NCBI RefSeq assembly: GCF_001194135.2
Contig: NC_068993.1
Location: 21,806,484-21,870,483, forward strand
Length of the DNA stretch: 64,000 bases
Reading direction: 5' to 3'
DNA from: Octopus bimaculoides
Taxonomy: Eukaryota
Both the position numbers and the translations under genes were made by a program. This document shows, piece by piece, positions 27,491-64,000 of this stretch. The notes beneath the pieces were generated by a model. It made no database searches and was not told the origin of the DNA. It saw only the letters and a program-made list of their open reading frames with translations. How positions within the stretch are numbered: position 1 is the first letter of the stretch; each line of letters begins with the position of its first letter.

Positions 27491-28698
27491 ATACATACGT
27501 ATGTATGTATATATGTGTGTGTGTGAATGTGTATGTATCTTCTCTATTTCATCAATTATATTCTTTCTTTGAAGTTGGAGCTGGTTTCTAACAAAGATAC
27601 AAGGCTCTATCTTTGGAATGTAGATAACGTAAACAAAGTCACATTTTAAACCAGAGAAGTCTTGTATAGTTTTACTGTTCCACCTACAGATATTAGTTGT
27701 AATGTCCGAATGAGTTAGTTGATGTCTTTTTCTGAAAACCTTATCAGATCGCTTACTGGTGTTGTGTTGCTAATTTCAGCCATAATCGTGGTGGAGAAAT
27801 TCCACGTGGTATAACATATATGTTTAAAATCCAGTCTGAATAACGCTATGTTAGTAGGTAAAGGGATTTTCTCTTATTTACAATAGGAGAAATAAACTAG
27901 TTACTGATTTAAGCTGGAGGAATCGCAATAAATATAGAAGGGAACGTTAAGAAAAAGTACGTCTGATGTTGAGGGTGACATCTTGTATGTATGTGTGTAT
28001 GTATGTATGTATGTATGTATGTATGTATGTATGTATGTACGACTCTATGTATGTATATATTATGAATGTATGTATGATTGCAAATACATATACACAGCCT
28101 TGCAGGTGAGAGAAAGCTGGATTGCTATTTTTACAACTAGCTGCATACGTTTGCTTCATTTAACCTTCAAATGGAAATGTTAATTTTGCTACGAGCAACA
28201 TATATTTAAATAGCACCTGTTGCTTTCAATTTGTGTGATTAAAATAACATAATAAATGGTAATGCTGATTGCTCGTTGCCGATATACTGTATCTTAGGCA
28301 GATCAACGCAAACTGATTTAAGCTATACGTAAAAAGGAGACTCAAACTGTGTACAACATACTCAGGAAATAGTGGCCATATAAATACCACTTTCTTTTCT
28401 TTGATGAACAGCATTTCTCTTCTCAATACGCAGCATCTGTTTTGGTTGTCATTCATTATGGCAACTTGTCTACATTAAGTTATTGGCTTATGAGCGTAGA
28501 GAGACCACAGCTGCTATGCATATTGGTTAGAGCAACCAAACACCAGTCACTTAGATAATAAATTAGCATTTCACCTATTTTCAGTAAGCCGCTGTTCTCT
28601 TGTACATATAATTAATTACAGCAATTGCAGTTTGTATTCATCGTCAATAAATTGTTCTTTTTCTTTTCTTATTTTTTACAGATTAAAAGGAACCCATA

Positions 28699-28840
28699 AT
28701 GAGTGGCTTGAGTCCCTTCAGTTTGTTAATTTTTATTTTCATCTACTGTCTCACGGTATATGCTGCAACAGCTATGAGCCTGGCTCAGGCATGTATGGAA
28801 TCACCCAGTATGTGCGAAAGTATCTCGCTTTCTCATTTAA
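28699..28840 (+). CDS. FMRFamide: FMRFamide precursor, signal-peptide coding exon (47 codons + 1 nt, phase 1)
   Basis: Pyrimidine tract and CAG acceptor ending at 28681; ATG at 28699; donor GTGAGT at 28841. MSGLSPFSLLIFIFIYCLTVYAATAMSLAQACMESPSMCESISLSHL is a hydrophobic signal peptide followed by LAQACxES, resembling the squid/cuttlefish FMRFamide precursor N-terminus as I recall it. Phase matches the acceptors at 36087 and 61606. Confidence 0.9.
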
Positions 28841-28984
28841 GTGAGTATCGTTTTTTGACTTCACTCTGTTTTGCTTTTCCACAATCACAGAATTGATCAG
28901 TCAATTTACGTGTATACATACACACACGCCGCTAACACCAGCAACATTGATAATTTCTTAATTTGGGTTTGATATCTTGTTTAC

Positions 28985-31874: not shown

Positions 31875-31923
<49 letters not shown>

Positions 31924-33600: not shown

Positions 33601-33825
33601 AAGATTATGGTATTCGTTTTGCCACGAGGATGTAGATATTTTATGGCATCCTGTGCAAATGTCATAAAGTATAGACAGAAATTGTGAAAACTTTCTCTGG
33701 TGGTTTATAAGTAGAATTCTGACGCTACAGCTTTGACAAACATTGATTGATACACGCTGATTCTTCTTTAAAACTGACGTTATGGGCACATATGCACTAT
33801 CATAACGAATACTTATAGATGCATA

Positions 33826-33900
<75 letters not shown>

Positions 33901-34750: not shown

Positions 34751-35200
34751 AAAATTTAATAATGAGGGTAGAAATCGATATTAATCAATCAAAAGCAGTG
34801 GCCTAGCATATTTAAAAAATCCGAAGATTAAAATTATATTACATACAAAATTAAGAGGAATGACCACCAAAAGTGGACTCCTATATGCTAGAAATAGATG
34901 CCAAATTACCTAACCTCGAAGAGTGTGTTCTCAAGAAAAAACTTTCAGCAAATCGCCAGACTGTAAAAATGAGCAATACAAATGAAAATATATGAAATGA
35001 AAAAAACGATTAACTTACGTACCAATGGTTACACAAGTAAATATCTGCAGGATCATCAGTGTAGTCTGTCTATTACAAAATATGATTTTCAGAACTAAAC
35101 ACAGAACGTTCACCCCAGAGGAAGCATGTGTAAAGTTCTGCAAATTACATTCGGTGTATTTTTTGATTAATATCAATTTCTACCCTCATTATTAAATTTT
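34751..35200. repeat. ~40-bp inverted repeat pair (34751-34794 / 35161-35200) in a copy-1-specific insertion
   Basis: AAAATTTAATAATGAGGGTAGAAATCGATATTAATCAA versus the reverse complement of TTTTGATTAATATCAATTTCTACCCTCATTATTAAATTTT. Confidence 0.85.
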
Positions 35201-35295
35201 TGAATAACGATGTTCTCAAACCGGTAAATAAGCTGCAGAAATTTATCAATTGCAGAGTTATTTCCGGCCTCAGCGCGCCAGATAGGTCGTGCTAC

Positions 35296-35338
35296 TTCAG
35301 GCTGATGACGAGCAATGACTCAGAAACATGTCCCTGAA
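35296..35338 (+). ncRNA. Minimal type I hammerhead ribozyme motif (Penelope-associated type)
   Basis: TTCAGG-CTGATGA-cGAGcaatgaCTCa-GAAAC-AT-GTC-CCTGAA: 6-bp stem I (TTCAGG/CCTGAA), intact CUGAUGA and GAAA cores, GAG/CTC stem II, palindromic ACATGT stem III and a GUC cleavage triplet. Confidence 0.75.
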
Positions 35339-36087
35339 TGCAGGCTAGGCTGGGTGGGGATGCTTGTCTCCCCCTCACAAATATAAGGACACAGAAAATG
35401 TGTAAAGGCCGATATGAAGTGGTCCAGCTTCCTAGGGCTAAATAGCGGCAGTATGATTCCCTAATAGCGACTGTAGATAGTTATATGGATGTAAGGATAG
35501 ATATATAGATAGTACGAAATAATTTCATTTAATCTCTAAGGTACATTTACTCAAGCAAAACGTACGCATTGTAATTTCAGTTATATAAATAACGTGTCAG
35601 ATTTAATCACATCAAAACCTCTAATATGAAGAAGACTTAACTTATTAGTCAATAATATATTATAATCTAAGCCTATCATTTCCAAAGGATGTATATTAGA
35701 CGAAAGTGGTATTGTAATATCTGAGCGTTGCGGGGACAAAGGTCATAGTGGAACATAGAATTGTGAAACGAATTAGTTATAGCCCCGTAAATTATGATTC
35801 CGTATTTCTTTAACGTTGTATATATGGTGTTGATAACCTCGGTATATGTAAATAGACCTTATATAGTTATGAATATAGTAGTTGTAGTAGTATTCATAGA
35901 AAAAAAAATCTGTTTGAAACATTGTGAGATAGGGCAAGTCTCTGCGATAACAGTACAATAACAATCATACTAATATTGCTAGTGAGAACAATGCCAATAG
36001 TAATGTCAGTACTAATAATGATGATGTTAATTATGATACATTAAGACAAATATTTATGCCTTTTTTTCTTTTCTTATCTCTTTGCAG

Positions 36088-36899
36088 GTTCTGAAGAAGG
36101 ATTAAAGAGCAAACGCTTTCTTCGTCCAGGAAGAGCTCTTTCTGGAGATGCTTTCTTGAGATTTGGTAAGAATGGTCTAAATTTACCATTCGAAGATAAA
36201 CGATTCCTTCGATTTGGTAGAACTGATCGTCAATTTGAAGATATGCTAAAGGAAGTTTTACAGAGAGCTGAAAACGTTGACAATAGACAAAAGAGATCCA
36301 CTGACAACATTCCTCAAAGCTCAGTTCAAGATGACAGTTCGAAAATTACGAAGAGAAATGCTGACGCCAGTGATAACGGAATGGACAAGAGGTTTATGAA
36401 ATTTGGTAAATCCGGTGATCTTCCTTACGTCAATGAGTGGAGTGACAAGCGTTTCATGAGATTCGGTCGGGAACCTGACAAGCGATTCATGCGATTTGGA
36501 AAATCTGATGATAAACGATTCATGCGCTTTGGTAGAAACCCAAATGAACTTGAAGATAGACTCGAAGAAGGAAAACGCTTTATGAGATTTGGACGGGGCA
36601 ATGAGGAAGAAGAAAAACGGTTTATGAGGTTTGGACGAGATCCTGACAGTAAGTTAATGGGTTATGGTAATAGTGAGGAAGAAAAACGCTTTATGCGCTT
36701 TGGTAGAATGTCAGACGAAGCTGATGCTCAAAAAAGGTTCATGAGATTTGGCCGAAGTGTTGATGATGACAAGGCGAACAGGTTGAAAAAATCAAACGAT
36801 CAGCTTCGTACGATAAGAATGGGACGTAGCGTTGATGATAAAAAGGTGAACAGCGCTAATGGGGATGCGTACCTAAGAATTGGACAAAGTGATGAATAA
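36088..36899 (+). CDS. FMRFamide: FMRFamide precursor peptide-coding terminal exon (copy 1)
   Basis: Strong pyrimidine tract and TTTGCAG acceptor ending at 36087, in frame with the signal exon. Encodes KR-FLRP-GR, ALSGDAFLRF-GK, KR-FLRF-GR, an RQKR furin-type site, KR-FMKF-GK and seven KR-FMRF-G(R/K) units; stop TAA at 36897-36899. Joined CDS is 954 nt, 317 aa. Confidence 0.97.
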
Positions 36900-38389
36900 G
36901 ATGTTGGTACGTTGAGCAGGCTGACGGGATCCGTCCCATCTTTGGAAATAAGAAAATCAACTTTTTTCAAAACAAATAACTGCAGTAACAACAACAAGGA
37001 GCAACATCAGCAAGAATATGAGTAGGAACAAATAGAATATCAATACAACAACAACAATACCAATCAGATTTTGTGATCATATCTTGAACGTTGTGTTTAC
37101 ATCTATCATAAAACATCTGTTGGAGAGTAACGAACTGCTTGTTTAGGAGGAAACATTTTGATTTCTATATGACCAGTTCTAATTGAAAAGAAAGAAAGAA
37201 GGACATTATAAATTCATCAACAACTCAACTCTCTTATGGTGGTAGTTGGTATATTTCTCTATATTGTACAATTTATATAAAACTGGATCGATAGATCCTC
37301 GTCGTATCCAGAAATTCAGGACTTATACCAGCCTTCAATGTAGAGCTTTCTTCAGCATGCTTCATCACTATGTGTATATATGTATATGTGTATATGTGTT
37401 TATGTATACATTTGTCGAAAACCCCACTCTATATATATACCACTGTATATTTATGTTCGTGGTTATGTATGTGCATGTATGTTATATATATATATACATA
37501 TTTATATATGTACATACTATCATATATGTGCACTAGTTTGCATACATAACCCTCTCACATATGCATCAATATGCATCACAGACAAACATATAAATATATA
37601 TACATAGAAAAGAACCACCAAATAGAGTGAGTTTGATGAAATGGTTTTATGAAAATTAAATGTAAATTTTGTGGAGAATTAAAATTTTATTATATATCCT
37701 TCACGAGATTTCAGATTTACTTATCCAACTTAATGTACGTATTCTAATTAAACAATAATTATTTGCTGCCAAATGTATTTCTTACTTCAAATGTAGTTGA
37801 ATGCTTTGTTGTTGTTATATACTGACAAAATTGCTGGTGGTAAATCTGCATATTTAAACTCTTTTTGATTCTTTTATTCCTACATATAAAATTTGCAATA
37901 GAGTTTGGTGAAACATGGCTGTAATCAGAGATCAGGTCTCCGAAAGAATTATCTGTGGGGTCAACAACTGGCATGTTTATTTATTAGGTACAAGAGCTGA
38001 TATTTGTATCTAGTATTTATACATATTTTCAGTGTGATGAACTGAGATGTACCGAAAGAGAGTAAGAAGTGTGCCAGGCTACTAACAATAGTACACAATT
38101 TTATAGGTAGACCTTGCACATGGCGACTGATCTTTCAAAAGTTTGTAGCCGATTATAACAATTATACAATTTAATTGTTGTTCAATTTATTGACACAGTA
38201 AAGATGAAAAGCAAAGTCAAATGTCACAGAAGCTGAACTCAGAGCGTGGAGGGTTATAACTAAATACCTTGTGATAGTTTGTTTGAAGTTCTGCCAACCT
38301 GCTGCCATTATATCTAAGTAGAGGAAGATGATTGTCTTACTAGAAGTACAAGAGTTTCGATACACACNNNNNNNNNNTATTTTGCCTTT

Positions 38390-45693: not shown

Positions 45694-48003
45694 TTATGTT
45701 TGACTTTTGTTTTGCATTTGTACAAGTTGGATCTAAGTCTCACCCAGAGACCTCAAGAGACAACAAGTTAGAAGTTCATGTAGGTGTTATGCCTAGGGTA
45801 CCATATATTTGGATTTGTACATAGTGTTCTAGAGAATGTTTAAGAAACCATAAGAAAATTATGTATTTGTTTTAAAATTTGAGATCACATAGACAGTATA
45901 TTACGTAGGATATGGGCAGTTCCCATGAGCACTATCTTTTGAACTTCAGCCATTTTGGGGTTTCCTGGTATCTGAGCTAGGTAGTAACCAGCCTGTTTCG
46001 CTGTCATTCCCAGGGCACCTATGACAATAGGTATTGTTTTAGTCTTCAGGTTCCACATTTTGCTAATTTCTATTTCAAGATCTTTATATTTGCTCAGTTT
46101 TTGGTAGGTCTTGACAGATACGTTTATATCGATTGAGACAGTCATATCAATGAGGAGGCATGATTTTTGTCTGAAGTCTTTCAGTATGATGTCTGGCCTA
46201 TTTGCATCTATTTTTCTCTAAGTTGGAATGGTGAAGTTCCAGAGGAGTGAGATGTGATTATTTTCAGGCACTGGAGGTGGTTTGTGTTCCCATCAGTTTT
46301 ATCATGGGGCAGGTCCAGACTTCTGCAAATTACCCAGTGAATATATTGTGCAGCTCTATCATGCCTGCTGAGATACTCTGTAGGCGCAAGCAGACTGCAC
46401 ATGGAGACAACATGATCAATAGTTTCATTTTGTTGTTGACATACACGACACGTTGGGAAGCTGACGTGTTTAATATGTTGGCCTGGTAGTTTCTTGTCGG
46501 TAGGCATTGATCTTGGGCTGCTATGATAAGCTCTTCTATTTGTGATTTTAAGCCAGAAGCCATTAACCATTGATGGGTAAGGGCTTTGTCAACATCGGCA
46601 TTATTAGCTCTCTTTGGGTATTTGCCATTGAGCGGTTTTTCGTGCCATTTATCAGTCAGAATATCTAAGGCAGCACTTTTAACACGGGTTTTCATGCGCT
46701 TAGCTGTTTCTCTGCTTCTTTCTAGTACGTCAAATTCTGGAACTTGTTGTATTTGGAATTCACTTAAACATTCCTTTGCCTGTTTTTTTACAGAGTATGT
46801 TGCTTTCTTGTTTTCAGGTTTTAACATCCAGTCCTCATAGTTTTCAGGTAGGTGCCTAGGGCAATTGTGGCAACCTTCATTGTTAATGCCAGTTGTAAAA
46901 GTCCACGGCCTCCCTCTTTTCTTCGCAGATAAAGTCGTTCTATATCTACCTTGGTGTGGTGCATTCTATTCATTGTCAACAATTGTCGTATTTTTCTGTC
47001 AAGATAACATATTTCAGTAATTGACCAGTTAATGATATTGAAACTGTAAGTCACGACTTGCATGGCTAAAGTATCGATCGCTTCGATCTTGTTTCTTGCA
47101 TTCAGCTCTGTTTTGAGTATAGCTCTCACCCTGCGTTAACATTCTCTTCTTATCCTTTCCCTCATCACTGAATGTAAGATTCCGCCCCCTTCAAATACCC
47201 ACTAGGTATTTGTAGCTCTCCGCTGGTTTTCTAACTCCTTTGTGACATTCTGCTGGTCAAAGTTAACTTTAGATGTTTTTGTCATTTTTCCTTTGATAAA
47301 GCTAGCTTTTGCACATTTATCGAGGCCAAAGTGCATCCTGATATCATAACTGAATTGTTTAACATTCGCTAGTAAGCCCTGAATTTGTTGATCATTTTTT
47401 GCAAAGAGCTTTAAATCATCCATGTAAAAGAGATGATTTATAACTTTATCAAACAATTCACAACCGTACTGTACATCACTGAGCAATTTCGAGAGATGTA
47501 TTGAGGCTAAACAAAAGAAGAGTGTTGGTAGTGAATCACCCTGGAAATTGCTGCATGAAAGTCTTACATTTCCAGCATTTAGAGATTCATTATCACTGTT
47601 CAAAATCAGTGCGGTTCTCCATGATCTCTAGAAGAAGAATTTTCGCAGAGTACGTGGTAGACTATCAAAAGCTTTTTTTATAATCTATCCAGGCTATTGA
47701 AATTCTTTGTGTCGTTTGTGACAATCTTCCAAGACCCTCTTGGTTGTAAAGTAGATGATCTTGACAACCATAGGATCCACGTTTACATTCTTTTTGCTCA
47801 TTTAGGAAATATGCCACTTTCTGATAAAGCTATAGGTATATTCAGTCAAGGCAGATGTTAGCGTTTTATACATTATTGTTAAGCCGGTTATGTGGGTCGA
47901 TAATATTCTGGTTCATTTGTTTCTTCATTTTTGGTAAGTACGAATGTTAAACATTTACTAGCCAAGAGGGAATCATAATAGGATGTTGCAAAACATTATT
48001 GTA
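45694..48003 (-). mobile_element. 5'-truncated R4/Dong-like (RLE-type) non-LTR retrotransposon, pseudogenised
   Basis: Motifs in the expected order on the minus strand: PSWL, YRP, FQGDSL, NHLFYMDDLKLFAK, FGLDKC, RLYLRRKEGGRGL, IIAAQDQCLPTRNY, CCHC knuckle (CRVC...ETIDHVVSMC), RHD, RPDII and KYKDL...PIVIGALG. Flanked by (ATT/ATC)n at 45626-45693 and 48004-48053. Confidence 0.9.
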
Positions 48004-50013: not shown

Positions 50014-50927
50014 NNNNNNNNNNNNNNNNNNNNNNNNNNNNNNNNNNNNNNNNNNNNNNNNNNNNNNNNNNNNNNNNNNNNNNNNNNNNNNNNNNNNNNN
50101 NNNNNNNNNNNNNNNNNNNNNNNNNNNNNNNNNNNNNNNNNNNNNNNNNNNNNNNNNNNNNNNNNNNNNNNNNNNNNNNNNNNNNNNNNNNNNNNNNNNN
50201 NNNNNNNNNNNNNNNNNNNNNNNNNNNNNNNNNNNNNNNNNNNNNNNNNNNNNNNNNNNNNNNNNNNNNNNNNNNNNNNNNNNNNNNNNNNNNNNNNNNN
50301 NNNNNNNNNNNNNNNNNNNNNNNNNNNNNNNNNNNNNNNNNNNNNNNNNNNNNNNNNNNNNNNNNNNNNNNNNNNNNNNNNNNNNNNNNNNNNNNNNNNN
50401 NNNNNNNNNNNNNNNNNNNNNNNNNNNNNNNNNNNNNNNNNNNNNNNNNNNNNNNNNNNNNNNNNNNNNNNNNNNNNNNNNNNNNNNNNNNNNNNNNNNN
50501 NNNNNNNNNNNNNNNNNNNNNNNNNNNNNNNNNNNNNNNNNNNNNNNNNNNNNNNNNNNNNNNNNNNNNNNNNNNNNNNNNNNNNNNNNNNNNNNNNNNN
50601 NNNNNNNNNNNNNNNNNNNNNNNNNNNNNNNNNNNNNNNNNNNNNNNNNNNNNNNNNNNNNNNNNNNNNNNNNNNNNNNNNNNNNNNNNNNNNNNNNNNN
50701 NNNNNNNNNNNNNNNNNNNNNNNNNNNNNNNNNNNNNNNNNNNNNNNNNNNNNNNNNNNNNNNNNNNNNNNNNNNNNNNNNNNNNNNNNNNNNNNNNNNN
50801 NNNNNNNNNNNNNNNNNNNNNNNNNNNNNNNNNNNNNNNNNNNNNNNNNNNNNNNNNNNNNNNNNNNNNNNNNNNNNNNNNNNNNNNNNNNNNNNNNNNN
50901 NNNNNNNNNNNNNNNNNNNNNNGTATG

Positions 50928-53261: not shown

Positions 53262-54771
53262 NNNNNNNNNNNNNNNNNNNNNNNNNNNNNNNNNNNNNNN
53301 NNNNNNNNNNNNNNNNNNNNNNNNNNNNNNNNNNNNNNNNNNNNNNNNNNNNNNNNNNNNNNNNNNNNNNNNNNNNNNNNNNNNNNNNNNNNNNNNNNNN
53401 NNNNNNNNNNNNNNNNNNNNNNNNNNNNNNNNNNNNNNNNNNNNNNNNNNNNNNNNNNNNNNNNNNNNNNNNNNNNNNNNNNNNNNNNNNNNNNNNNNNN
53501 NNNNNNNNNNNNNNNNNNNNNNNNNNNNNNNNNNNNNNNNNNNNNNNNNNNNNNNNNNNNNNNNNNNNNNNNNNNNNNNNNNNNNNNNNNNNNNNNNNNN
53601 NNNNNNNNNNNNNNNNNNNNNNNNNNNNNNNNNNNNNNNNNNNNNNNNNNNNNNNNNNNNNNNNNNNNNNNNNNNNNNNNNNNNNNNNNNNNNNNNNNNN
53701 NNNNNNNNNNNNNNNNNNNNNNNNNNNNNNNNNNNNNNNNNNNNNNNNNNNNNNNNNNNNNNNNNNNNNNNNNNNNNNNNNNNNNNNNNNNNNNNNNNNN
53801 NNNNNNNNNNNNNNNNNNNNNNNNNNNNNNNNNNNNNNNNNNNNNNNNNNNNNNNNNNNNNNNNNNNNNNNNNNNNNNNNNNNNNNNNNNNNNNNNNNNN
53901 NNNNNNNNNNNNNNNNNNNNNNNNNNNNNNNNNNNNNNNNNNNNNNNNNNNNNNNNNNNNNNNNNNNNNNNNNNNNNNNNNNNNNNNNNNNNNNNNNNNN
54001 NNNNNNNNNNNNNNNNNNNNNNNNNNNNNNNNNNNNNNNNNNNNNNNNNNNNNNNNNNNNNNNNNNNNNNNNNNNNNNNNNNNNNNNNNNNNNNNNNNNN
54101 NNNNNNNNNNNNNNNNNNNNNNNNNNNNNNNNNNNNNNNNNNNNNNNNNNNNNACTGGTTTATCGATCCCGAAAGGATGAAAGACAATGTCGACCTCGGC
54201 GGAATTAGAACTGAGAACGTAAAGACAAACGAAATACCACTAAGCATTTCGCCCGACGTGCTAAATTTTCTGCCTCCTCGCCGCTGCCTCTTCTGATGGC
54301 ACACAAGTGTCGATGAAGGGTTGAATGACAAAATCCAAGCTTCTTTGCTATTTCATCAACAGTTACGATGGCATTTTGTTCCACCAGGTTTTGCGGGACG
54401 TACTTGTCGAGCTCTACAGATCTTCCAGGACGAGACTCGTCTTATAGGCTGTAGATTCTGGTTTGGTATTTCTGGAACCACCTTTCCCACTGACTTATGT
54501 TTATTGTCCTATCCTCATATACTGGATTAATATTGCTTGCACTTTCGTTGCGCTGTTCCTTTGTTGAACTCATAAAGCAAAATATGCCGAATATTCTCCT
54601 CTGTCACTTCCATTATAGCTTTCGCAAATATAACTGTTGAAATCGAACTGCACTCTTCAAACTTGCAATAAGGTGAAATGTCTACCTACTTTTATAGCGA
54701 GTTGGTGTAGGTAATGTATCCGGACCCCCTCTGACTTTAAATTCATGCATTATTTATGGGCTAACTCAATA

Positions 54772-55774
54772 TATATAAAGGGATACAAAAAATGGGACAA
54801 GAACGCAAAACATCCAGACAGTTTGATGGTACAAAAAAGGGACTAGATTCCTTGGAAAAAAGAGCACTAGATTCCTTGAAAGAAAGCAGCGAATGTATAC
54901 GAAAATAAGGTCGCAAAAAAAAACAGAGAAATTGTGCACAAATACAAAAGCAATAACAGGACATTAACAACAGGTGTCTTTCGACTAAAGACGATTTAAA
55001 GTGAGCTGGCGTGTGTCGAAGCGAAGCCTTAAGGCAGGGACGTAAGAGATGACAGGCATGGAGAGGAATATAGATGTTGCATGATGGAAGTCGAACCAAG
55101 AAAGAAAGGTCAGTCTTGGCCGAAGACCGGTTACGTGGAGAGAGAAGAGAGAGGTAGAGGCAGAGCGATAGAAGAATAGGGAGGGACTAGAAAAAAAGAA
55201 AAGGGACAGAGTGAAGTGAAAGAGGAGAGAAGGTGAGACTGAAGATAAAGGCAGGAAATATGAGAGAGGGGGAACAAAAGAAGGAAGAGTGGAAAGCACG
55301 AAGTAAGTGTGAAGGGGCTGATAGAAGGAAAGAAAGAAAGAATGAAAGAATAAGAGAGACGTACAAAATTTAGATATATATATATTTACTTACATATAAG
55401 AGATAATAGTGTACGTACGCCGCCGTATGTATATAAAAAGGAATTAAAAAAATGGGACAAGAGCGCAAAGTATCCAGACAGTTAAATGATACATAAAATG
55501 GACAACAAAACATCCAGAGAGATGATCCAATAAAAAAGGGACAAGAAAAACAATGACGGGTCATTCGGAGTTCCAGATTATCTTTGCAATTTCGGCTGGT
55601 TATACCCGAGATTGCTCCAATCTGGCCAACCCCAAAGAAAAACTAAGCTAAGAGCACTAGATTCCTTGGAAGAAAGCAGCGAATGTATACGAAAAAAAAG
55701 GACGGGAAAAAAACGGAGAAATGGTGGACAAAAGCAATAACAGAACAATAACAACAGGCGTCCTTCTACTATGG
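54772..55774. repeat. Unclassified insertion with ~200-bp internal direct repeats; no visible counterpart in copy 1 (equivalent position there is partly a gap)
   Basis: AAAAATGGGACAAGA...CATCCAGA...GAGCACTAGATTCCTTG(G)AAGAAAGCAGCGAATGTATACGAAAA...AACAACAGG(T/C)GTC occurs at ~54790-54985 and again at ~55450-55770. Confidence 0.6.
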
Positions 55775-58700
55775 NNNNNNNNNNNNNNNNNNNNNNNNNN
55801 NNNNNNNNNNNNNNNNNNNNNNNNNNNNNNNNNNNNNNNNNNNNNNNNNNNNNNNNNNNNNNNNNNNNNNNNNNNNNNNNNNNNNNNNNNNNNNNNNNNN
55901 NNNNNNNNNNNNNNNNNNNNNNNNNNNNNNNNNNNNNNNNNNNNNNNNNNNNNNNNNNNNNNNNNNNNNNNNNNNNNNNNNNNNNNNNNNNNNNNNNNNN
56001 NNNNNNNNNNNNNNNNNNNNNNNNNNNNNNNNNNNNNNNNNNNNNNNNNNNNNNNNNNNNNNNNNNNNNNNNNNNNNNNNNNNNNNNNNNNNNNNNNNNN
56101 NNNNNNNNNNNNNNNNNNNNNNNNNNNNNNNNNNNNNNNNNNNNNNNNNNNNNNNNNNNNNNNNNNNNNNNNNNNNNNNNNNNNNNNNNNNNNNNNNNNN
56201 NNNNNNNNNNNNNNNNNNNNNNNNNNNNNNNNNNNNNNNNNNNNNNNNNNNNNNNNNNNNNNNNNNNNNNNNNNNNNNNNNNNNNNNNNNNNNNNNNNNN
56301 NNNNNNNNNNNNNNNNNNNNNNNNNNNNNNNNNNNNNNNNNNNNNNNNNNNNNNNNNNNNNNNNNNNNNNNNNNNNNNNNNNNNNNNNNNNNNNNNNNNN
56401 NNNNNNNNNNNNNNNNNNNNNNNNNNNNNNNNNNNNNNNNNNNNNNNNNNNNNNNNNNNNNNNNNNNNNNNNNNNNNNNNNNNNNNNNNNNNNNNNNNNN
56501 NNNNNNNNNNNNNNNNNNNNNNNNNNNNNNNNNNNNNNNNNNNNNNNNNNNNNNNNNNNNNNACTGTGAGTTCGGTGTTTCACAAGTATTACTTCAATTA
56601 CAGAAAGTACTTCGTTTCAATTCAACTTGCGAGTAGAGTTGTTGCAAAGTAGATGTAGTGTAATAATGCGTTTTGCTTCAAAGAAAATATATCTTTGTTG
56701 ATACTTTAATTAGGATTTGTCAGTTTAGAAAACAAAAGATAAAAAAGCGAAAGCTAAGAAAAGATGGCAAAGAAAATACTGTCTACGATGCGTCATCATC
56801 TTTGTTCAATACAGGTAGGTAAGAGATGTTAGATTAGATTAATTTATGGAAAGAAGTTAGAAATTAGATTTATGTTAAATTTGATACATCTGAAGCATTT
56901 ATAAAAAGAAATTCATATATGAGAACAAGTATTATATTTTGAGGTGAAAGTTCACGTACAGGCACAAATTATCTTGAGCAAAGTGGTCCATTTAAAAGTC
57001 CTGGATTTGTGAAATAAAGTTCGATTCTAGCATGTGATTCACATACACGCACACAAGCACGCGCACATACATGTATAAACACACAAACACACACACATAT
57101 ATATAAATATACATGTATGTATGTATGTATGTATGTATGTATGTATGTATATATAAGTCTGTGTGTATCACTCCTAAAGTCTAAAATGATATATGTACGT
57201 TCATTACTAAAGTGCATATACAATTCTCGTAAGCCGTTACACATATATCTATATATATATACACGCAAACATGCATACATTGTCGCTCAAACTGTAGAAC
57301 ACTTTTTCTCATATATGCATAGAGAGGCGCATACGCTGTTATATGATTTTCTTCATAACTTCTTTTCGGCTTCTCTCCCATAGCGAAAAAGTTTTTAAGA
57401 CCTGGACAATGACCATGCCGGTTAATATCTCGCGAGTGAAATTGGTATGGTAGGCCTAAACTATATAGAACCCAGTCAGGTGAATGTGCGTGTGTGTATG
57501 AGCGTGTGCGATCGTTTGTGTATTTGTGTTCGTGGTGTGTGTGTGAGTGTGTATGTGTGTGTATGTGTGTGTCTGTGCGTCCCCGACCATTTATTTTCAT
57601 CACGGCAGATAGTGCTGTAGAATGTTGGCATCCAGGCTCTGGGACCAAAACCAAAACCAAAACTGGTTGCGATTACGAACACCGTAATTTAGCGATGGCT
57701 TCTATGGACAAACGCTTTAGACTAATATAAATTAATCATCATTTTACCCGAAGTCTTATCTAAGATGTACCGTTTGCAATATAATTTAACTACGGGGAGA
57801 TCTGCCAAGAAATCATTTTGGCTAGTGCATCTCTGATAACACTACTAAGCACAAGCGCCTTTCTCTTGGCGATCACTTTTGTTATCATCTTTAACTCAGT
57901 GAGTTAAAGATTTACAGGTTAAAAATTTTCTACCAGTTCTAGTTTTTCTTGAACAGTGCAATCATAATTTTGTTGTTATTGTTATTATAGTTAATATGAA
58001 ATATCTCGCCTTCCAAGCAGAAATCGCAGTAACATATTTATTCAATCGCGTAATGGATCCTGTTCTAATGTGCTATTTATGACTTTTATAACGATCCGGT
58101 TGTTCAGTGAGAATTCATCCGACAACACACATAGTAAATGATTGAGATTATGGATTCTTTATTTATCTATTTCAGAATAATTTATTCTAATATTTTTTTC
58201 TGTTAGAAAATAATATAATACGCTTAGTTAACGCTATTTAAATGGGCAGTCGTTTTTTTCTTGTTTGGGTGGATAACGCTTTTCGTCGTATTTCTTTTTT
58301 ACCCGGCCTCCCTCTCAATATTACTCGGTTTACGAGAATTTTTCATTCGACGAAGCTCTTAGCGTTTCCAGTTTCCATACAGAACTTTCCAATGAAGTTT
58401 GATATGAAACGGTGAAAGTAGAACCAGCAACAAAACAACGAAGCATTGGAAACTATCCCTGTTCTAGAAGTCATCGTCGAGCTTCCTGCATATTTCTAAT
58501 TCTTTTTGTTTTAATCATTTAGTCGAATGCTATCTGCATGCTTACCGCTAGTTCACACATGCTCCTGTTATATTTACCCAGTTGTTAGTTTGTATATGGA
58601 AGAAGAGCATGATCTTGATCTTGCTGAAATGAGAAATGTTTCTTAGAAGTCACAATAAGCGGTGACTGCAATTTAAGTACAAAAAACTTAGTTTGTGCTG

Positions 58701-60804
58701 TCGTTTCCTCTACTCTAACCACCGAAGATAAGGTTTGGTCATGACGTTTTGGATTTGCATTGAATGTGTTCTTCCTAGAACATCATTATTTCTGACATTG
58801 TCATTCGATTTGATTTTCCAAAAAGACTGAATTTTTTTATGCTGAAAATTTTCGTGTTGGTGGATTTGATAATTATAAACAATGCAGAGAGTACGAGCGC
58901 CTAGCATACAAAGCCTTTCCATTTCAGTTTCAGGTGAAAGACGGGATATGAGAAGTACTGAAATTCTGTGTCGTTGTTGGAAGACGTTTGTGATGTAATA
59001 TTAAAAAAATTAGAATATAGAAAAGCTGCTACAAAGATAGCAAAGGGAATATCGAATTTCCTTCGATTAGTTCATCATAGATAACAATTTACATAAAGCT
59101 TCCTTGGTCAAGTGGACTGAGTTCTGGATTTAATGTGCTGAATGAATCAAAAACCTGTACGCGCGAAATTTTTGGATCAGCGATGATTTAAAACAAAGAA
59201 GAGCATTTTTGTTATCCTTTTTTGCTGCTCAGAGACAGAAGTGTTTTGAGAACCAAAACTCCCGAATGAGAAGTTGTAAAAGGTTTATCTTTATCACAAT
59301 TACCAATGAACATGCTATTGAGGAAAATAACAGACATATGATTTGTAAATACGAAGAGAATCGCGGACACATGTTTTTGCCTAAATTGGTGTCATCAGCT
59401 CACGGAATTCCAGTAACTTGTCCCTACATGGACGTATACACAAGGTGTGGAATATATGTATGGCCTAGTTAATTTGCCCAACGATAATAGTATTCGTTTT
59501 GCAATGACGATGTACATATTTAATGGCTTCTTGGGTAAATTTCACAAAATATAGAAAGAAATTGTGAAAGCTTTCTCTGGTGGTTTATAAGTAGATTTCT
59601 GACGCTACAGCTTTGATACACATTGATTGATACACGCTGATTGTTCTTTAAAAATGTCGTTATGGGCACATATGCATTATCATAACGAATACTTATATAT
59701 GTATATAATTATATACATGTATGTGTACCTATTTATTTACATGTATGTATGTGTACGTTTACTTATATACAGCTTTGCACCTTCCGCTTTTTCTATCCAA
59801 AAAGGTTAATCAATGTTATCCTCTTATTTATAGATTTATATATGTATATGTGGTGTACTTCGTGCGAGATATTTCCCAAAGTTATATATATATATATNNN
59901 NNNNNNNNNNNNNNNNNNNNNNNNNNNNNNNNNNNNNNNNNNNNNNNNNNNNNNNNNNNNNNNNNNNNNNNNNNNNNNNNNNNNNNNNNNNNNNNNNNNN
60001 NNNNTATTATTACCAGTAGATTGATTGTATAAATCTTGTAACATACCTATCATATATATGACAAACAGAAATATCATTTTGCTATCAACACTCAACATAA
60101 GATATAGTGTGTTTCAACAATGATATGATGATTAATTAAATGTATATGTTGTGGAAATATTAAAATTGTGTCCATTGATAAATTTTGAAATTCTTTATGC
60201 AATTTAATGTATGTTTTGTATTTAAACAACTGATTACAATCTAAATTTGTGCTTTGTTTCCAATATGATTTAATACACACTTGTTTTTTATTTCCTTATT
60301 ACATCTTGAAGATTTTGGAGAATTTTGGTTCTGTATTTCAATATTTATTGTTCTTCAATTCACGTAGATCACTTTCGTGATAAATTTCAATGAAACACGA
60401 ATTTAAAATGAAACATGATTGCGGTAGCCCATGTACAAAGTATAATCTTTGGTCCGAACTTCAAAATATCAGTATTGTATTGATTACAGATAGATAATGT
60501 CTGATAATTGGAATACTAGACTTACAATTATAGCTGTTTACAATTGGGTGAAACGAAGCAAGAAGTGACAGGATACCGAAAATAGTCGAACATTCTGTCG
60601 TGGGGAAACCACTGGCTCACCTGTCGAATTTGCTTTGTGTTCAGAGTGAATAATAATAAAGTGATAAATCAAAATATTAACTAAATCGATGGATAGGGTA
60701 GTTGATAGGTACTTTGGTCCGTGAGCACTAATATTCATATATAAAATATAATGATAGATAGATAGGCAGAAAGAGAGGGGGAAAGAGAAAACTAACAGAC
60801 AGAC

Positions 60805-60853
<49 letters not shown>

Positions 60854-61606
60854 TAGATAGATAGATAGATAGATAGATGGTTGGAGAGATGATAGTATAA
60901 AAGAATTTCATTTTATCTCTAAGGTACATCTACTCAAACACAACGTTAGGGGTGATTTCCACACGAATTATTTTGAAGCTCCCTGTCAAAATATGAGAGG
61001 CAAACACACAGATACACAAACGCGCATACATATAGACACGCCGAAACACAAACACACGTGCACATTGTAATTCAGTTATATAAATAAAGTGTCATATTTA
61101 ATCACATCAAAGCCTGTAATCTGAAATAGGCTTAATTTATTAGTTAATAATGTATTATAACATTAAACTAAGCCTATCATTTCGAAAAGATGTCTATTAG
61201 ACGAAAGTGGTTTTGTAATATATATTAATACGTAATATCTCAGCGTTGCGGGGATAAAGGTCATAGTTGAACATAGAATTTTGAAATGACATTGTTAAAG
61301 TCCCATAAGTTATGATTCCATACTTCTTTAATGTTGTATGCCTGGTATTAATAACCTCGGTATATGTAAATAGACCTTATATAGTTATGAATATAGTAGT
61401 TGTAGTAGTATTCATAGAAAAAAAAATCTGTTTGAAACATTGTGAGATAGGGCAAGTCTCTGCGATAACAGTACAATAACAATCATACTAATATTGCTAG
61501 TGAGAACAATGCCAATAGTAATGTCAGTACTAATAATGATGATGTTAATTATGATACATTAAGACAAATATTTATGCCTGTTTTTTCTTTTCTTATCTCT
61601 TTGCAG

Positions 61607-62040
61607 TTTCTGAAGAAGGATTAAAGAGCAAACGCTTTCTTCTTCCAGAAAGAGCTCAAGATGACAGTTCGAAAATTACGAAGAGAAATGCTGACGCCAG
61701 TGATAACGGAATGGACAAGAGGTTTATGAAATTTGGTAAATCCGGTGATAAAAAGGTGAACAGGTTGAAAAAATCAAACGATCAGCTTCCTATGATAAGA
61801 ATGAGACGTAGCGTTGATGATAAAAAGGTGGACAGGTTGAAAACATCAAACGATCGGCTTCCTGTGATAACAATGGGACGTAGCGTTGGTGATAAAAAGG
61901 TGAACGGGTTGAAAACATCAAACGATCAGCTTCCTGTGATAACAATGGGACGTAGCGTTGGTGATAAAAAGGTGAAAAACGCTATAAGACAAGGCCCTAC
62001 TGGGTATCCGTACCTAAGAATTGGGCGAAGTGATGAATAA
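61607..62040 (+). CDS. Remodelled duplicate of the FMRFamide peptide exon (candidate alternative terminal exon, or second exon of a paralog)
   Basis: Intact TTTGCAG acceptor at 61606, same phase 1, open to TAA at 62038-62040: (I)SEEGLKSKRFLLPERAQDDSSKITKRNADASDNGMDKRFMKFGKSGDKKVNRLKKSNDQLPMIRMRRSVDDKKVDRLKTSNDRLPVITMGRSVGDKKVNGLKTSNDQLPVITMGRSVGDKKVKNAIRQGPTGYPYLRIGRSDE. Expression unproven. Confidence 0.7.
61747..61974 (+). repeat. 72-nt coding tandem repeat, 3 full units + 12 nt
   Basis: Units 61747-61818, 61819-61890 and 61891-61962 derive from the single unit at 36765-36836 in copy 1. Confidence 0.95.
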
Positions 62041-63069
62041 GATATTCCATCTTTGGAAATAAGAAAAACAACTTTTTTCACAGCAAATAAATGCAGTAAT
62101 AACAAGGAACAACATCAGCAAGAATTTGAGTAGGAACAAATAGAATATCAATACAACAACAACAATACCAATCAGATTTTGTGATCATATCTTGAACATT
62201 GTTTACATCTATCATAAAACATATGTTGGGGAGTAACGAACTGCTTGTTTAGGAGGAAACATTTTGATTTCTATATGACCAGTTCTAATTGAAAAGAAAG
62301 AAAGAAGGACATTATAAATTCATCAACAGCTCAACTCTCTTATGGTGGTAGTTGGTATATCTCTCTATATTGTACAATTTATAAAACTGGATCGATAGAT
62401 CCTCATCGTATCCAGAAATTCAGGACTTATACCAGCCTTCAATGTAAAGCTTTCTTCAGCATGCTTCATCACTATGTGTATATATGTATATGTGTATATG
62501 TGTTTATGTATACATTTGTCGAAAACCCCACTCTATATATATATACCACTGTATATTTATGTTCGTGGTTATGTATGTGCATGTATGTTATATATNNNNN
62601 NNNNNNNNNNNNNNNNNNNNNNNNNNNNNNNNNNNNNNNNNNNNNNNNNNNNNNNNNNNNNNNNNNNNNNNNNNNNNNNNNNNNNNNNNNNNNNNNNNNN
62701 NNNNNNNNNNNNNNNNNNNNNNNNNNNNNNNNNNNNNNNNNNNNNNNNNNNNNNNNNNNNNNNNNNNNNNNNNNNNNNNNNNNNNNNNNNNNNNNNNNNN
62801 NNNNATGAAATGGTTTTATGAAAATTAAATGTAAATTTTGTGGAGAATTAAAATTTTATTATATATCCTTCACGAGATTTCAGATTTACTTATCCAACTT
62901 AATGTACGTATTCTAATTAAACAATAATTATTTGCTGCCAAATGTATTTCTTACTTCAAATGTAGTTGAATGCTTTGTTGTTGTTATATACTGACAAAAT
63001 TGCTGGTGGTAAATCTGCATATTTAAACTCTTTTTGATTTTTTAATTCCTACATTTAAAATTCAAAATA

Positions 63070-63900
63070 TTAATGGCAGACCTCATCAGAGTAATGAGAA
63101 ATGTGTCCCGCATGTGCGACCCTACAGTGTTAAAGAGACACATACGACATTTCGTTCACTGCAAGCAGTTCTCAGGATTACAGCCATAAAGAAATGATCA
63201 GACTATACAAAGGAGCAATGAGGAAATTTGAAACTATCATATATATCGATAGAAATGGGATTTGCCCACTCTATAGTATCAAGTCATGGAACACAATTGA
63301 AAGTACTAAGAAGAAAATATGGAAGGCCAAATCATGGTATGATAGCCACAAATATCTGAGTGTCATGTTCGTCGACACCACCCCTAGAGGCGAACTGGCG
63401 CACCACTTTAGAAGGTCCCTAGACAAACTTAAGCTAAGAATTAAGGTTGTTGAAAGGCCAGGCAACCCTATCAAATCCCTAATCGGTAAAACCTACCCTT
63501 GTAGTAGAACTCCTGTACTGATAGGACCTGAACTGTATGTAGATTTAGCCCACAAACAAACTGTGAAGCCAGGAATGTAGTGTATAGCATAAGATGTACA
63601 GAGGGACAATGCAATAACAGGACAATGACGTATGTAGGGGAGACAGCACGGAGCATAGGAGATCGGGTAAACGGGCATTTGTTGGAACTTAAGGAAGAGG
63701 ACTCATCGGTTCTGTACCAGCACGCCGAGCAGGAACGAGGGCTCACTCAACAACATAGAAGTTAAAATCTTGTCCACACATAGAACAGACGCAACGCTTA
63801 GACAAATTAAAGAAGCTACACACATAATAGAAGATAAACCTAGCCTGAATAGGAAACTGGAAGGGAACATTTGCACACACGCCCAACACACCACAACCTA
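63070..63900 (+). mobile_element. 5'-truncated Penelope-like element (RT C-terminus + GIY-YIG endonuclease), frameshifted
   Basis: VMRNVS, CPLYSIKSW, WY, SVMFVDTTPRGEL and IKVVERPG (PLE linker), then RNVVYSIRC...YVGETARSIGDRVNGH (GIY-YIG) and LRQIKEATHI...PSLNRK. Confidence 0.85.
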
Positions 63901-64000
63901 TGACAGATCAAAATCCTCATAAACTGATAACAATATGAATATAATATAATACAATACAAAGATAGATAAATGAAATTAAATATCTATATACATTAACAAA

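What the first reader, a model, noticed from the sequence alone, without database searches (positions are those of the whole stretch)
61747..61962. New neuropeptide repeat born from a spacer-region unit: predicted ...LPVITM-amide peptides
The single copy-1 unit (DDKANRLKKSNDQLRTIRMGRSVD) is triplicated and diverged. In units 2 and 3, KK became KT, removing the inner dibasic site while GR is kept. This predicts the 16-mers VDRLKTSNDRLPVITM-NH2 and VNGLKTSNDQLPVITM-NH2. In unit 1, GR became RR, predicting non-amidated SNDQLPMIRM. I do not recognise PVITMamide as a described molluscan family. It looks like a snapshot of how multi-copy neuropeptide precursors originate.
Basis: partly seen in the sequence, partly recalled or inferred. 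Interest (0 to 1): 0.8.

Follow-up and report, generated by a model that had tools for sequence, protein, structure and literature searches.

The report
Truncated FMRFamide gene copy, triplicated tail
The repeat is real, but it lies in a cut-down, fast-drifting second copy of the octopus FMRFamide neuropeptide gene that has no visible secretion-signal exon, so the predicted "LPVITM-amide" peptides are unproven and probably never made.

Summary
Observation confirmed. Window 61744-61976 holds 3.2 tandem copies of a 72-nt, in-frame unit (93% matches). The window is Octopus bimaculoides chromosome CM046613.1. Copy 1 (exons 28699-28842 and 36088-36899) is the canonical FMRFamide precursor, XP_014775928.1. 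Copy 2 (exon 61607-62040) lies in a duplicated segment of at least 8-9 kb (54159-63062). Two in-frame deletions removed ALSGDAFLRF, FLRF, the furin site and all seven FMRF copies; only FMKFG remains.

The "spacer unit" is a decayed FMRFGR copy. In copy 1 and in O. vulgaris it is already flanked by 30-nt direct repeats 72 nt apart, which are a substrate for slippage.

Against a new neuropeptide:
- No signal-peptide exon is assembled upstream, though N gaps exist.
- The one stand-alone gene model on record starts at an internal Met (109 aa).
- Copy 2 coding sequence evolved at the intron rate, with 20 nonsynonymous and 1 synonymous differences.
- The two LPVITM-GR sites lost the P4 Arg and are the only Gly-Arg sites that fail the usual basic-residue rule.
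- The tail is absent from Argonauta and cuttlefish precursors.

The tail is not unseen: it is in the RefSeq prediction XP_014775931.1 (isoform X2), a chimeric-looking model. No paper mentions the peptides.

Verdict: a lineage-specific, probably decaying paralogue; modest interest.

The parts
28679..28842 (+). Copy 1 (canonical FMRFamide gene): exon carrying the start codon (28699) and signal peptide MSGLSPFSLLIFIFIYCLTVYA...; donor A|GTGAGT, phase 1
   Evidence: tblastn with a cuttlefish N-terminus, sequence and RNA contigs L006/L004 spliced 28842|36088. The spliced product equals XP_014775928.1.
36088..36899 (+). Copy 1 main coding exon: FLRPG, ALSGDAFLRFG, FLRFG, furin site RQKR, FMKFG, 7 x FMRFG, then the tail. 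The 3'UTR continues to at least 37375.
36750..36851 (+). Parental single unit (36762-36833, DDDKANRLKKSNDQLRTIRMGRSV) bracketed by 30-nt direct repeats at 36750-36779 and 36822-36851 (24/30 identical, 72 nt apart). These repeats are the slippage substrate.
   Evidence: The same arrangement is present in O. vulgaris and O. sinensis.
54159..63062 (+). Duplicated segment (copy 2), paralogous to 29986-37893: most of the intron, the coding exon and the 3'UTR. Its left edge abuts N gap 53262-54153.
   Evidence: Self-BLAST blocks at 79-89% identity, 98.8% in the last block.
61607..62040 (+). Copy 2 exon/ORF. It has the same acceptor (ttgcag|) and is open to the stop at 62038-62040. Two in-frame deletions, a 15-nt insertion and the 72-nt array are present. 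The product keeps only one FaRP copy (FMKFG).
   Evidence: Pfam FARP hits only KRFMKFGKS, below threshold.
61656..61749 (+). 94-nt tract 100% identical to copy 1 (36326-36419). It is either a gene-conversion tract or a constrained stretch, and it is the place where the RefSeq isoform X2 model switches from copy 1 to copy 2.
61711..62040 (+). 109-aa ORF from the first in-frame Met (MDKRFMKFGK...). It is on record as a called gene on this chromosome and has no signal peptide.
   Evidence: Control ORFs are not on record.
61744..61815 (+). Unit 1: GDKKVNRLKKSNDQLPMIRMRRSV (KK kept, GR>RR)
61816..61887 (+). Unit 2: DDKKVDRLKTSNDRLPVITMGRSV (KK>KT, P4 Arg>Thr)
61888..61959 (+). Unit 3: GDKKVNGLKTSNDQLPVITMGRSV
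61960..62040 (+). Partial fourth unit plus C-terminal tail GDKKVKNAIRQGPTGYPYLRIGRSDE*. It carries a 5-codon insertion and a Q>R change that creates YLRI-G-R with a P4 Arg. There are 8 nonsynonymous and 1 synonymous differences from copy 1.
62805..63062 (+). End of the 3'UTR with poly(A) signals (62824, 62847, 62916). It is 98-99% identical to copy 1 (37636-37893) and to O. vulgaris/sinensis. The right edge of the duplication is here.

Best explanation
The 216 bases are three tandem 72-nt units inside the last exon of a second, truncated copy of the Octopus bimaculoides FMRFamide neuropeptide gene.

Shown:
- A segment of at least 8-9 kb (most of the intron, the main coding exon and the 3'UTR) is duplicated about 25 kb downstream of the parent gene.
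- In the copy, two in-frame deletions removed ALSGDAFLRF, FLRF, the furin site and all seven FMRF copies. Only FMKFG and the C-terminal tail remain.
- The tail unit is already a 1.3-copy repeat in the parent, flanked by 30-nt direct repeats 72 nt apart.
- The end of the unit, LRTIRMGRSVD, is a decayed copy of the adjacent KRFMRFGRSVD.

Inferred:
- Unequal crossing-over or replication slippage between those direct repeats expanded the unit to 3.2 copies. This is the same process that builds FMRFamide repeat arrays, here acting on a dead repeat.
- The duplication happened in the O. bimaculoides lineage after its split from O. vulgaris/sinensis.
- Copy 2 lacks its own signal-peptide exon, has drifted at the neutral rate with almost only amino-acid-changing substitutions, and is best read as a decaying gene relic that may still be transcribed. 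Its open frame yields at most a non-secreted 109-aa product.
- The predicted LPVITM-amide 16-mers are therefore most likely not produced.
For: Identity and paralogy:
- The spliced copy 1 product equals XP_014775928.1, and RNA contigs confirm its splicing.
- Self-BLAST defines the duplicated blocks, and the exon alignment shows the deletions and insertion.

Origin of the unit:
- Direct repeats are 24/30 identical and 72 nt apart in copy 1 and are present in O. vulgaris/sinensis.
- The unit end matches the last FMRF copy at 19/33 nt against a background mean of 9.3, and its best in-frame matches are all FMRF copies.

Timing:
- Copies 1 and 2 share about 2.4 kb of intron sequence that is absent at that spot in O. 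vulgaris/sinensis.
- Branch lengths over 3025 clean non-coding columns are c1 0.034, c2 0.054 and O. vulgaris 0.057.
- No protein with this tail from any other species appeared among 1.84 billion representatives.

No secretory entry:
- No exon-1 paralogue was found by tblastn or sensitive blastn.
- The 109-aa Met-start ORF is a called gene on the chromosome, while control ORFs are not.
- The model joining exon 1 to the copy 2 exon (191 aa) is absent from the protein collection, although copy 1 proteins from RNA assemblies are present.

No constraint:
- Nei-Gojobori counts give 1 synonymous and 20 nonsynonymous differences (pS 0.018, pN 0.091).
- All 8 variable sites among the units are nonsynonymous.
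- With the copy 2 intron mutation spectrum, 18.1 substitutions are expected in 276 nt and 21 are observed. The probability of at most 1 synonymous change is 0.03-0.06.

Processing and conservation:
- The two LPVITM-GR sites are the only Gly-Arg sites without a basic residue at P2/P4/P6/P8.
- Pfam FARP does not match the units.
- Argonauta and cuttlefish precursors lack the tail, and the residue before Gly differs between O. bimaculoides (M) and O. vulgaris (T) in the parent unit.
Against: - The frame is intact even though four indel events occurred, and two of them are not repeat-mediated.
- The acceptor site is intact.
- The copy 2 3'UTR changed more slowly than its intron (b_c2 0.020 against 0.054; 0.008 in the poly(A) element). 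This suggests the transcript, or at least its 3' end, is still constrained or was recently converted.
- The nonsynonymous excess could reflect positive selection rather than decay.
- Two gene models include this exon (the 109-aa gene and RefSeq isoform X2), which hints at RNA coverage.
- N gaps at 50014-50922, 53262-54153 and 55775-56562 could hide an exon-1 paralogue.
- The parent's exon 1 could in principle splice to the copy 2 acceptor.
- I could not inspect RNA-seq reads.
Confidence: 0.55

Rival explanations
1. The copy 2 exon is used as a coding terminal exon behind a signal peptide, either by alternative splicing from the parent gene's exon 1 (a 191-aa precursor) or from an exon-1 paralogue hidden in an assembly gap. 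The product enters the secretory pathway and is cut into FMKFamide plus new peptides, including LPVITM-amides and a ...YPYLRI-amide.
For: - The acceptor is intact and is in the same phase as copy 1.
- The ORF is open despite several indels.
- The 3'UTR and poly(A) region are conserved.
- A precedent exists: the Lymnaea and Helix FMRFamide loci splice one 5' exon to alternative peptide-coding exons (PMC4208409).
- N gaps lie upstream.
- The marginal dN>dS is compatible with adaptive change.
- YLRI-G-R and FMKF-G-K meet the cleavage rule.
Against: - The 191-aa product is not in the protein collection, and no octopod protein of that architecture turned up.
- RNA contigs run straight from exon 1 into the copy 1 exon.
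- The stand-alone model on record starts at an internal Met.
- The LPVITM-GR sites lack the usual upstream basic residue.
- There is no purifying selection on the peptide cores beyond the young U2/U3 identity.
Confidence: 0.22
2. RefSeq isoform X2 (XP_014775931.1) is a real mRNA: exon 1, then the copy 1 exon up to FMKFGKSGD, then a 25-kb intron into the copy 2 exon. This would give a secreted precursor with ALSGDAFLRFamide, FLRFamide and FMKFamide plus the triplicated tail.
For: The model exists (254 aa, P0004). Its last 130 residues match the copy 2 product (query positions 14-143) and its first 157 residues equal copy 1.
Against: - The switch lies in the 94-nt tract that is identical in both copies.
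- The only AG|GT in that tract (36391/36392 and 61721/61722) is a weak donor (GTTTAT) and an acceptor without a pyrimidine tract.
- The protein now appears only in EukProt, not in the NCBI/nr, UniRef or Logan sources. It is not on record as a gene product, though only a gene's longest product is recorded.
- This is the typical outcome of chimeric transcript evidence between near-identical paralogues.
Confidence: 0.07
3. It is an assembly artefact: the array or the whole copy 2 comes from mis-assembled short reads of the single FMRFamide gene.
For: The region is a short-read assembly with many N gaps, including 62596-62804 just downstream. No independent read-level check was possible.
Against: - Copy 2 differs from copy 1 by 11-21% in flanking blocks, with many indels.
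- It has its own branch in the three-way comparison.
- The three units carry distinct substitutions.
- These differences are far beyond haplotype or error levels.
Confidence: 0.04

Closest known systems
Cephalopod FMRFamide precursor gene (O. bimaculoides XP_014775928.1; O. vulgaris/sinensis QHX41569.1/XP_029644126.1; Sepia officinalis FMRF_SEPOF)
   Same: Copy 2 is a direct paralogue: same acceptor, same reading frame, 94 nt identical, shared intron and 3'UTR, and it retains the FMKFG copy and the C-terminal tail.
   Different: It lacks the signal-peptide exon in assembled sequence, the furin site, ALSGDAFLRF, FLRF and all seven FMRF copies. The tail unit is triplicated and its RxxRxGR motif has decayed further to PVITMGR. 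It evolves without protein-level constraint.
RefSeq prediction XP_014775931.1, 'FMRFamide-related neuropeptides-like isoform X2' (O. bimaculoides)
   Same: It contains exactly the triplicated tail and the YPYLRIGRSDE end, so the peptide sequences are already in a public database.
   Different: It is a computed model that fuses the copy 1 5' half with the copy 2 tail across an implausible intron. It is not discussed in any paper found.
Alternative splicing at the Lymnaea/Helix FMRFamide locus (tetrapeptide versus heptapeptide exons sharing only the 5' exon)
   Same: One signal-peptide exon could serve two downstream peptide-coding exons that arose by duplication (PMC4208409).
   Different: There both exons encode RFamide peptides that have been demonstrated. 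Here no junction evidence exists and the second exon has lost its RFamide copies.
FxRIamide (FLRIamide) neuropeptide family of molluscs, expressed in octopus brain and arm
   Same: The copy 2 C-terminus ...YPYLRI-G-R would end in an aromatic-x-Arg-Ile-amide like FxRIamides.
   Different: FxRIamide is a separate gene. Here YLRIG is a decayed FLRFG-type copy at the end of the FMRFamide precursor, and in the parent gene it is followed by Q, not R, so it is convergent at best.
Non-RFamide by-product peptides of FMRFamide precursors (for example the acidic 'SEEPLY' peptide of Lymnaea; from my own knowledge)
   Same: Spacer or tail segments of a FaRP precursor can be released and detected as peptides.
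   Different: Those come from the expressed, secreted parent precursor. Release from copy 2 has no evidence.

Membership tests
FMRFamide-related peptide (FaRP) precursor | N-terminal signal peptide | tested here: not met
   There is no exon-1 paralogue in the assembled sequence upstream of copy 2. The gene model on record starts MDKRFMKFGKSGDKK..., with no hydrophobic segment. N gaps leave a residual doubt.
FMRFamide-related peptide (FaRP) precursor | Multiple copies of [FYW]-[FMIL]-R-F-G-[KR] flanked by basic sites (Pfam PF01581) | tested here: not met
   Only one match, at KRFMKFGKS, scoring 14.5 bits against a cut-off of 15.5. The parent scores 55.6 bits with 6 stretches.
FMRFamide-related peptide (FaRP) precursor | Tetrabasic/furin site (RXK/RR) dividing the precursor into two domains (PMC4208409) | tested here: not met
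   RQKR of copy 1 lies inside the first deletion.
FMRFamide-related peptide (FaRP) precursor | Descent from the FMRFamide gene (homology and synteny) | tested here: met
   There are colinear paralogous blocks over at least 8 kb, a shared acceptor and a shared 3'UTR.
Amidated neuropeptide (the proposed LPVITM-amide repeat) | Gly amidation donor followed by a convertase site that fits known motifs (basic residue at P2, P4, P6 or P8) | tested here: not met
   Gly is present, but LPVITM-G-R has T, V and L at P4, P6 and P8. These are the only Gly-Arg sites in the product that fail the rule; FMKFGK and YLRIGR pass. The rule is permissive and has exceptions.
Amidated neuropeptide (the proposed LPVITM-amide repeat) | Peptide core conserved under purifying selection across copies or species | tested here: not met
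   There are 0 synonymous against 4-7 nonsynonymous differences between units, and 1 against 20 between the copies. The rate equals the intron rate. No orthologue was found. The parental residue before Gly differs between O. bimaculoides and O. vulgaris.
Amidated neuropeptide (the proposed LPVITM-amide repeat) | Expression in neurons and detection of the mature peptide | not testable with these tools
   No read-level RNA-seq or MS data were available. Exact-product look-ups found only the genome record.
FxRIamide family | Dedicated precursor with several F-x-R-I-G copies | tested here: not met
   There is a single Y-L-R-I-G-R at the C-terminus of an FMRFamide paralogue.
Unprocessed (duplicated) pseudogene | Partial duplicate with loss of essential parts and neutral substitution pattern | tested here: met
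   The start/signal exon is missing in the assembly and the peptide copies are deleted. The substitution count is 21 observed against 18.1 expected at the intron rate.
Unprocessed (duplicated) pseudogene | Disabling lesions (frameshift or stop) in the remaining frame | tested here: not met
   The frame is open from the acceptor to the original stop, and all indels are multiples of 3. The chance of no stop among 21 substitutions is about 0.4, so this is weakly informative.

The most novel reading that the evidence does not exclude
Copy 2 is a young, species-lineage-specific neuropeptide gene or alternative terminal exon that is secreted through a shared or hidden signal exon. It would be evolving under positive selection and would release peptides with no RFamide end: LPVITM-amides and/or pQGPTGYPYLRI-amide, the latter gaining a functional Gly-Arg site by a Q>R change. 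That would be a caught-in-the-act birth of new ligands from a decayed FMRFamide repeat.
Probability: 0.08. Interest if true: 0.75.

Novelty: new variant of a known kind. Interest (0 to 1): 0.3.

Why it matters
If the peptides were real, this would be a rare dated example of a neuropeptide precursor inventing a new repeat family, and it would supply orphan ligands for octopus GPCR screens. As the evidence stands, the locus matters in three smaller ways. It is a clean illustration of how FaRP repeat arrays grow (slippage between flanking direct repeats) and decay (FMRFGR > RTIRMGR > PVITMGR). It is an annotation warning: RefSeq isoform X2 is probably chimeric, and probes or reads for FMRFamide can cross-map to copy 2 through the 94-nt identical tract and the 98%-identical 3'UTR end. 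It is also a candidate for testing whether partial duplicates of neuropeptide genes are transcribed.

Tried and rejected
- The word-index protein search with the copy 2 exon and with the tail alone returned nothing. It did not even return P0004, which contains the query exactly and was found by the other two searches. These negatives are therefore uninformative.
- The exact look-up of a likely RNA-contig fragment (the last 30 aa) and of isoform X2 found nothing.
- The O. vulgaris and O. sinensis loci (L002, L003) are colinear with copy 1 but reach only to window ~47100. The presence or absence of copy 2 in those species could not be read directly, and the inference rests on the shared intron insertion and the missing homologues.
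- The extension downstream of the window (L001) is almost all N.
- The search for an exon-1 paralogue by tblastn and word-7 blastn found none in assembled sequence.
- Rfam found nothing in 60500-64000.
- I looked for a gene-conversion signature in the close relative's transcript L004, which has Gly in SVGDKK like copy 2. There is no clear tract.
- I considered that the unit and tail evolved faster than neutral. After allowing for origin of the unit head from the partial second repeat, only the last 21 codons look accelerated (9 changes in 63 nt), which is too little to claim.

Full report
**What is in the sequence**

The finding's coordinates lie inside an open reading frame that begins at a good splice acceptor (ttttcttatctctttgcag|, exon from 61607) and ends at a stop at 62038-62040. 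Tandem Repeats Finder reports a 72-nt period, 3.2 copies, 93% matches, no indels and score 410 at 61744-61976. In codon register the units read as follows:
- U1: GDKKVNRLKKSNDQLPMIRMRRSV
- U2: DDKKVDRLKTSNDRLPVITMGRSV
- U3: GDKKVNGLKTSNDQLPVITMGRSV
- then GDKKVKNAIRQGPTGYPYLRIGRSDE*

**Where we are**

An exact-product look-up places the ORF on Octopus bimaculoides chromosome CM046613.1, assembly GCA_001194135.2. About 25 kb upstream in the window lies the canonical FMRFamide precursor gene (copy 1).
- Its signal-peptide exon has its CDS at 28699-28842, with donor A|GTGAGT.
- Its main exon is at 36088-36899.
- That exon encodes FLRPG, ALSGDAFLRFG, FLRFG, a furin site RQKR, one FMKFG and seven FMRFG copies.
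- The tail reads ...FMRFGRSVDDDKANRLKKSNDQLRTIRMGRSVDDKKVNSANGDAYLRIGQSDE.

The spliced product is exactly XP_014775928.1. Two RNA-assembly contigs (L006 and L004) confirm the 28842|36088 splice and show a further 5'UTR exon that is not in the window. The composition matches the published description of the O. vulgaris cDNA: seven FMRFamide copies and the uncommon FMKFamide (PMC4208409).

**Copy 2 is a truncated paralogue**

Self-BLAST shows colinear blocks 29986-37893 <-> 54159-63062 at 79-89% identity, and 98.8% in the last 258 nt. The exon alignment shows the following:
- The same acceptor is used.
- A 189-nt in-frame deletion (FLRPGRA|...|QDDSS) removes ALSGDAFLRF, FLRF and the furin site.
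- A 94-nt tract is 100% identical to copy 1 (61656-61749 = 36326-36419).
- A second in-frame deletion joins FMKFGKSGD directly to KKVN... and removes all seven FMRF copies.
- The 72-nt array follows, then a 15-nt insertion, then a heavily substituted tail.

Pfam's FARP model scores 55.6 bits on the parent. On the copy 2 product it gives only a sub-threshold 14.5 bits, at KRFMKFGKS, and nothing on the repeat units.

**The unit is a decayed FMRFamide repeat, and its expansion has an obvious mechanism**

In copy 1 the end of the unit, LRTIRMGRSVD, matches the adjacent last FMRF copy, KRFMRFGRSVD, at 19 of 33 nt. The in-frame background mean is 9.3, and all its best in-frame matches are FMRF copies. 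The final AYLRIGQ likewise looks like a decayed xFLRFG[KR].

In copy 1, and identically in O. vulgaris/sinensis, the unit is already bracketed by 30-nt direct repeats (36750-36779 and 36822-36851). They are 24/30 identical and exactly 72 nt apart. Unequal crossing-over or replication slippage between these repeats gives the array directly. This is an inference from the anatomy.

The order of events can be read from the units:
- R>P (CGT>CCT) is shared by all three.
- U1 keeps KK and IRM and then gained GR>RR.
- U2 and U3 share KK>KT, M>V and R>T, and differ from each other at four sites.

**Age and lineage**

The O. vulgaris and O. sinensis loci (L002, L003) are colinear with copy 1 and with the sequence downstream of it as far as window ~47100. 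They therefore do not reach the position of copy 2. Two indirect lines point to a duplication in the O. bimaculoides lineage, roughly as old as the split itself.
- Copies 1 and 2 share intron sequence (29986-30629 and 30940-31380 and their counterparts) that is absent at that place in the other two species.
- Over 3025 clean non-coding columns the three branches are c1 0.034, c2 0.054 and O. vulgaris 0.057.

A full HMMER scan of 1.84 billion representative proteins found the tail only in one O. bimaculoides protein. The Argonauta hians precursor ends ...FMRFGRSVNAVKPDISKEDANE and cuttlefish-type precursors end ...FMRFGRSADKCKGCLEG, without the unit.

**Can it make secreted peptides?**

Three transcript models compete.
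- Stand-alone gene. The 109-aa ORF from Met 61711 is on record as a called gene on the chromosome. An arbitrary 128-aa ORF and the 218-aa ORF of the copy 1 exon are not on record, so the record comes from a selective, intron-aware annotation. Its longest product has no signal peptide.
- RefSeq isoform X2 (XP_014775931.1, 254 aa). It fuses exon 1 and the copy 1 exon up to FMKFGKSGD with the copy 2 tail. The switch lies in the 94-nt identical tract. The only AG|GT there is a weak donor and an acceptor without a pyrimidine tract. The protein now survives only in EukProt, not in the NCBI/nr, UniRef or Logan sources. I read it as a chimeric model.
- Exon 1 spliced to the 61607 acceptor (191 aa). 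That product is not in the protein collection, and no octopod protein of that build was returned, although copy 1 proteins from RNA assemblies were.

No exon-1 paralogue is found upstream of copy 2. N gaps at 50014-50922, 53262-54153 and 55775-56562 prevent a firm exclusion.

**Selection**

Copy 1 and copy 2 differ at 1 synonymous and 20 nonsynonymous positions over 276 alignable nt (pS 0.018, pN 0.091). The three units differ at 8 sites, all nonsynonymous. Using the substitution spectrum of the copy 2 branch in the intron, 18.1 substitutions are expected and 21 are seen, and 22.6% should be synonymous. The probability of at most 1 synonymous change is 0.03-0.06. The protein therefore shows no purifying selection. 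The pattern is neutral decay or, at a stretch, positive selection.

On the other side, the frame is open although two non-repeat-mediated indels occurred. The copy 2 3'UTR is also more conserved than its intron (b_c2 0.020, and 0.008 in the 257-nt poly(A) element, against 0.054). This keeps a transcribed, partly constrained locus possible.

**Processing logic**

This rests on established knowledge of prohormone convertase motifs: a basic residue at P2, P4, P6 or P8, the "known motif" rule, which is permissive (PMC3499383). In the parent, RTIRM-G-R has Arg at P4, like FMRF-G-R. In U2 and U3 the R>T change removed it. LPVITM-G-R are the only two Gly-Arg sites in the product with no basic residue at P2/P4/P6/P8, whereas FMKF-G-K and YLRI-G-R comply.

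If the protein were secreted, three outcomes are at least as likely as the 16-mer amides:
- cleavage at the KK sites, giving non-amidated 22-mers;
- FMKFamide;
- a ...YPYLRI-amide, possibly pQGPTGYPYLRI-amide after the AIR|Q site.

The last of these ends like the FxRIamide family known in octopus, but by convergence, not membership.

**What is known**

No paper in the searchable library contains LPVITM, VITMamide, TIRMamide, YLRIamide or the parental SNDQLRTIRM. The only hits were to 'LRIamide', in papers on the separate FLRIamide/FxRIamide gene. None cites XP_014775931. The peptides are thus undescribed, but the sequence is not new to databases.

**Verdict**

The repeat is real. It sits in a lineage-specific, truncated paralogue of the FMRFamide gene. 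The best-supported reading (about 0.55) is a decaying, possibly transcribed relic whose array grew by slippage. Interest is modest.

Noticed in passing
window 37636-37893 and 62805-63062; L002 15969-16225; L003 15955-16211: A 257-nt AT-rich element at the end of the FMRFamide 3'UTR carries three AATAAA/ATTAAA signals. It is 98-99% identical between copy 1, copy 2, O. vulgaris and O. sinensis, while neighbouring sequence is 80-90% identical. It is probably a constrained 3'UTR/polyadenylation element, and it is also kept in the truncated copy. There is no Rfam match.
   Followed up: partly
window 61999-62040 (compare 36861-36899): In copy 2 a Q>R change turns AYLRIGQSDE into YPYLRIGRSDE. This creates a Gly-Arg site with a P4 Arg, so a ...YPYLRI-amide (possibly pQGPTGYPYLRI-amide) is a better-formed predicted peptide than the LPVITM-amides. 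It ends like octopus FxRIamide/FLRIamide peptides.
   Followed up: partly
window 36111-36131 (copy 1); P0003; P0005: Where cuttlefish precursors have KRFIRFGR, the octopod precursors (O. bimaculoides, O. vulgaris/sinensis, Argonauta hians) read KRFLRPGR. This predicts FLRP-amide instead of FIRF-amide. In copy 2 the site is further changed to FLLPER.
   Followed up: no
window 36642-36668 (copy 1 exon): ...DPDSKLMGYGNSEEEKR... between two FMRFG copies looks like another in-place decayed FaRP copy (KLMGYGN against RFMRFGR). It is conserved in O. vulgaris, so repeat decay is not confined to the tail.
   Followed up: no
P0004 = XP_014775931.1; window 36391/36392 and 61721/61722: RefSeq isoform X2 joins copy 1 to copy 2 inside a 94-nt identical tract through the only available AG|GT. 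It is probably a chimeric gene model. FMRFamide probes or reads can cross-map between the two copies here.
   Followed up: yes
window 24493-24692, 24796-25001, 26768-26958, 29900-30117, 54159-54284 (also 8633-8767 and 12211-12303 on the minus strand): A dispersed repeat family of about 200 nt is present. One member sits exactly at the left edge of the copy 2 segment, next to an N gap, so the duplication may have been mediated by recombination between such elements.
   Followed up: no
window 47202-47603 (-) and 46330-46827 (-); 63194-63922 (+): A reverse-transcriptase fragment (Pfam RVT_1, E 1e-5, YMDD motif) lies between the two gene copies. A cluster of ORFs with no Pfam hit begins right after the right edge of the duplication (63062); whether it is an insertion was not determined.
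   Followed up: partly
L004 (SRR16213284 contig), protein P0002: A transcript 98.8% identical to copy 1, from a close relative or a divergent individual, has GRSVGDKKVNSA (Gly as in the copy 2 units) where the window has GRSVDDKKVNSA. No clear conversion tract surrounds it.
   Followed up: partly
L006 nt 1-63; L004 nt 1-94: FMRFamide mRNAs carry a 5'UTR exon (...GGACAGACGCTTTACATTTAAGCAGATATCGGCAG|) that is not found anywhere in the 64-kb window. The promoter therefore lies upstream of the window or in an N gap.
   Followed up: partly
The word-index protein search failed to return P0004 when queried with a 96- to 144-residue stretch that P0004 contains exactly. The full HMMER scan, and a search with the parent protein, did return it. 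Negatives from that tool on K/D-rich repeats should not be trusted.
   Followed up: yes
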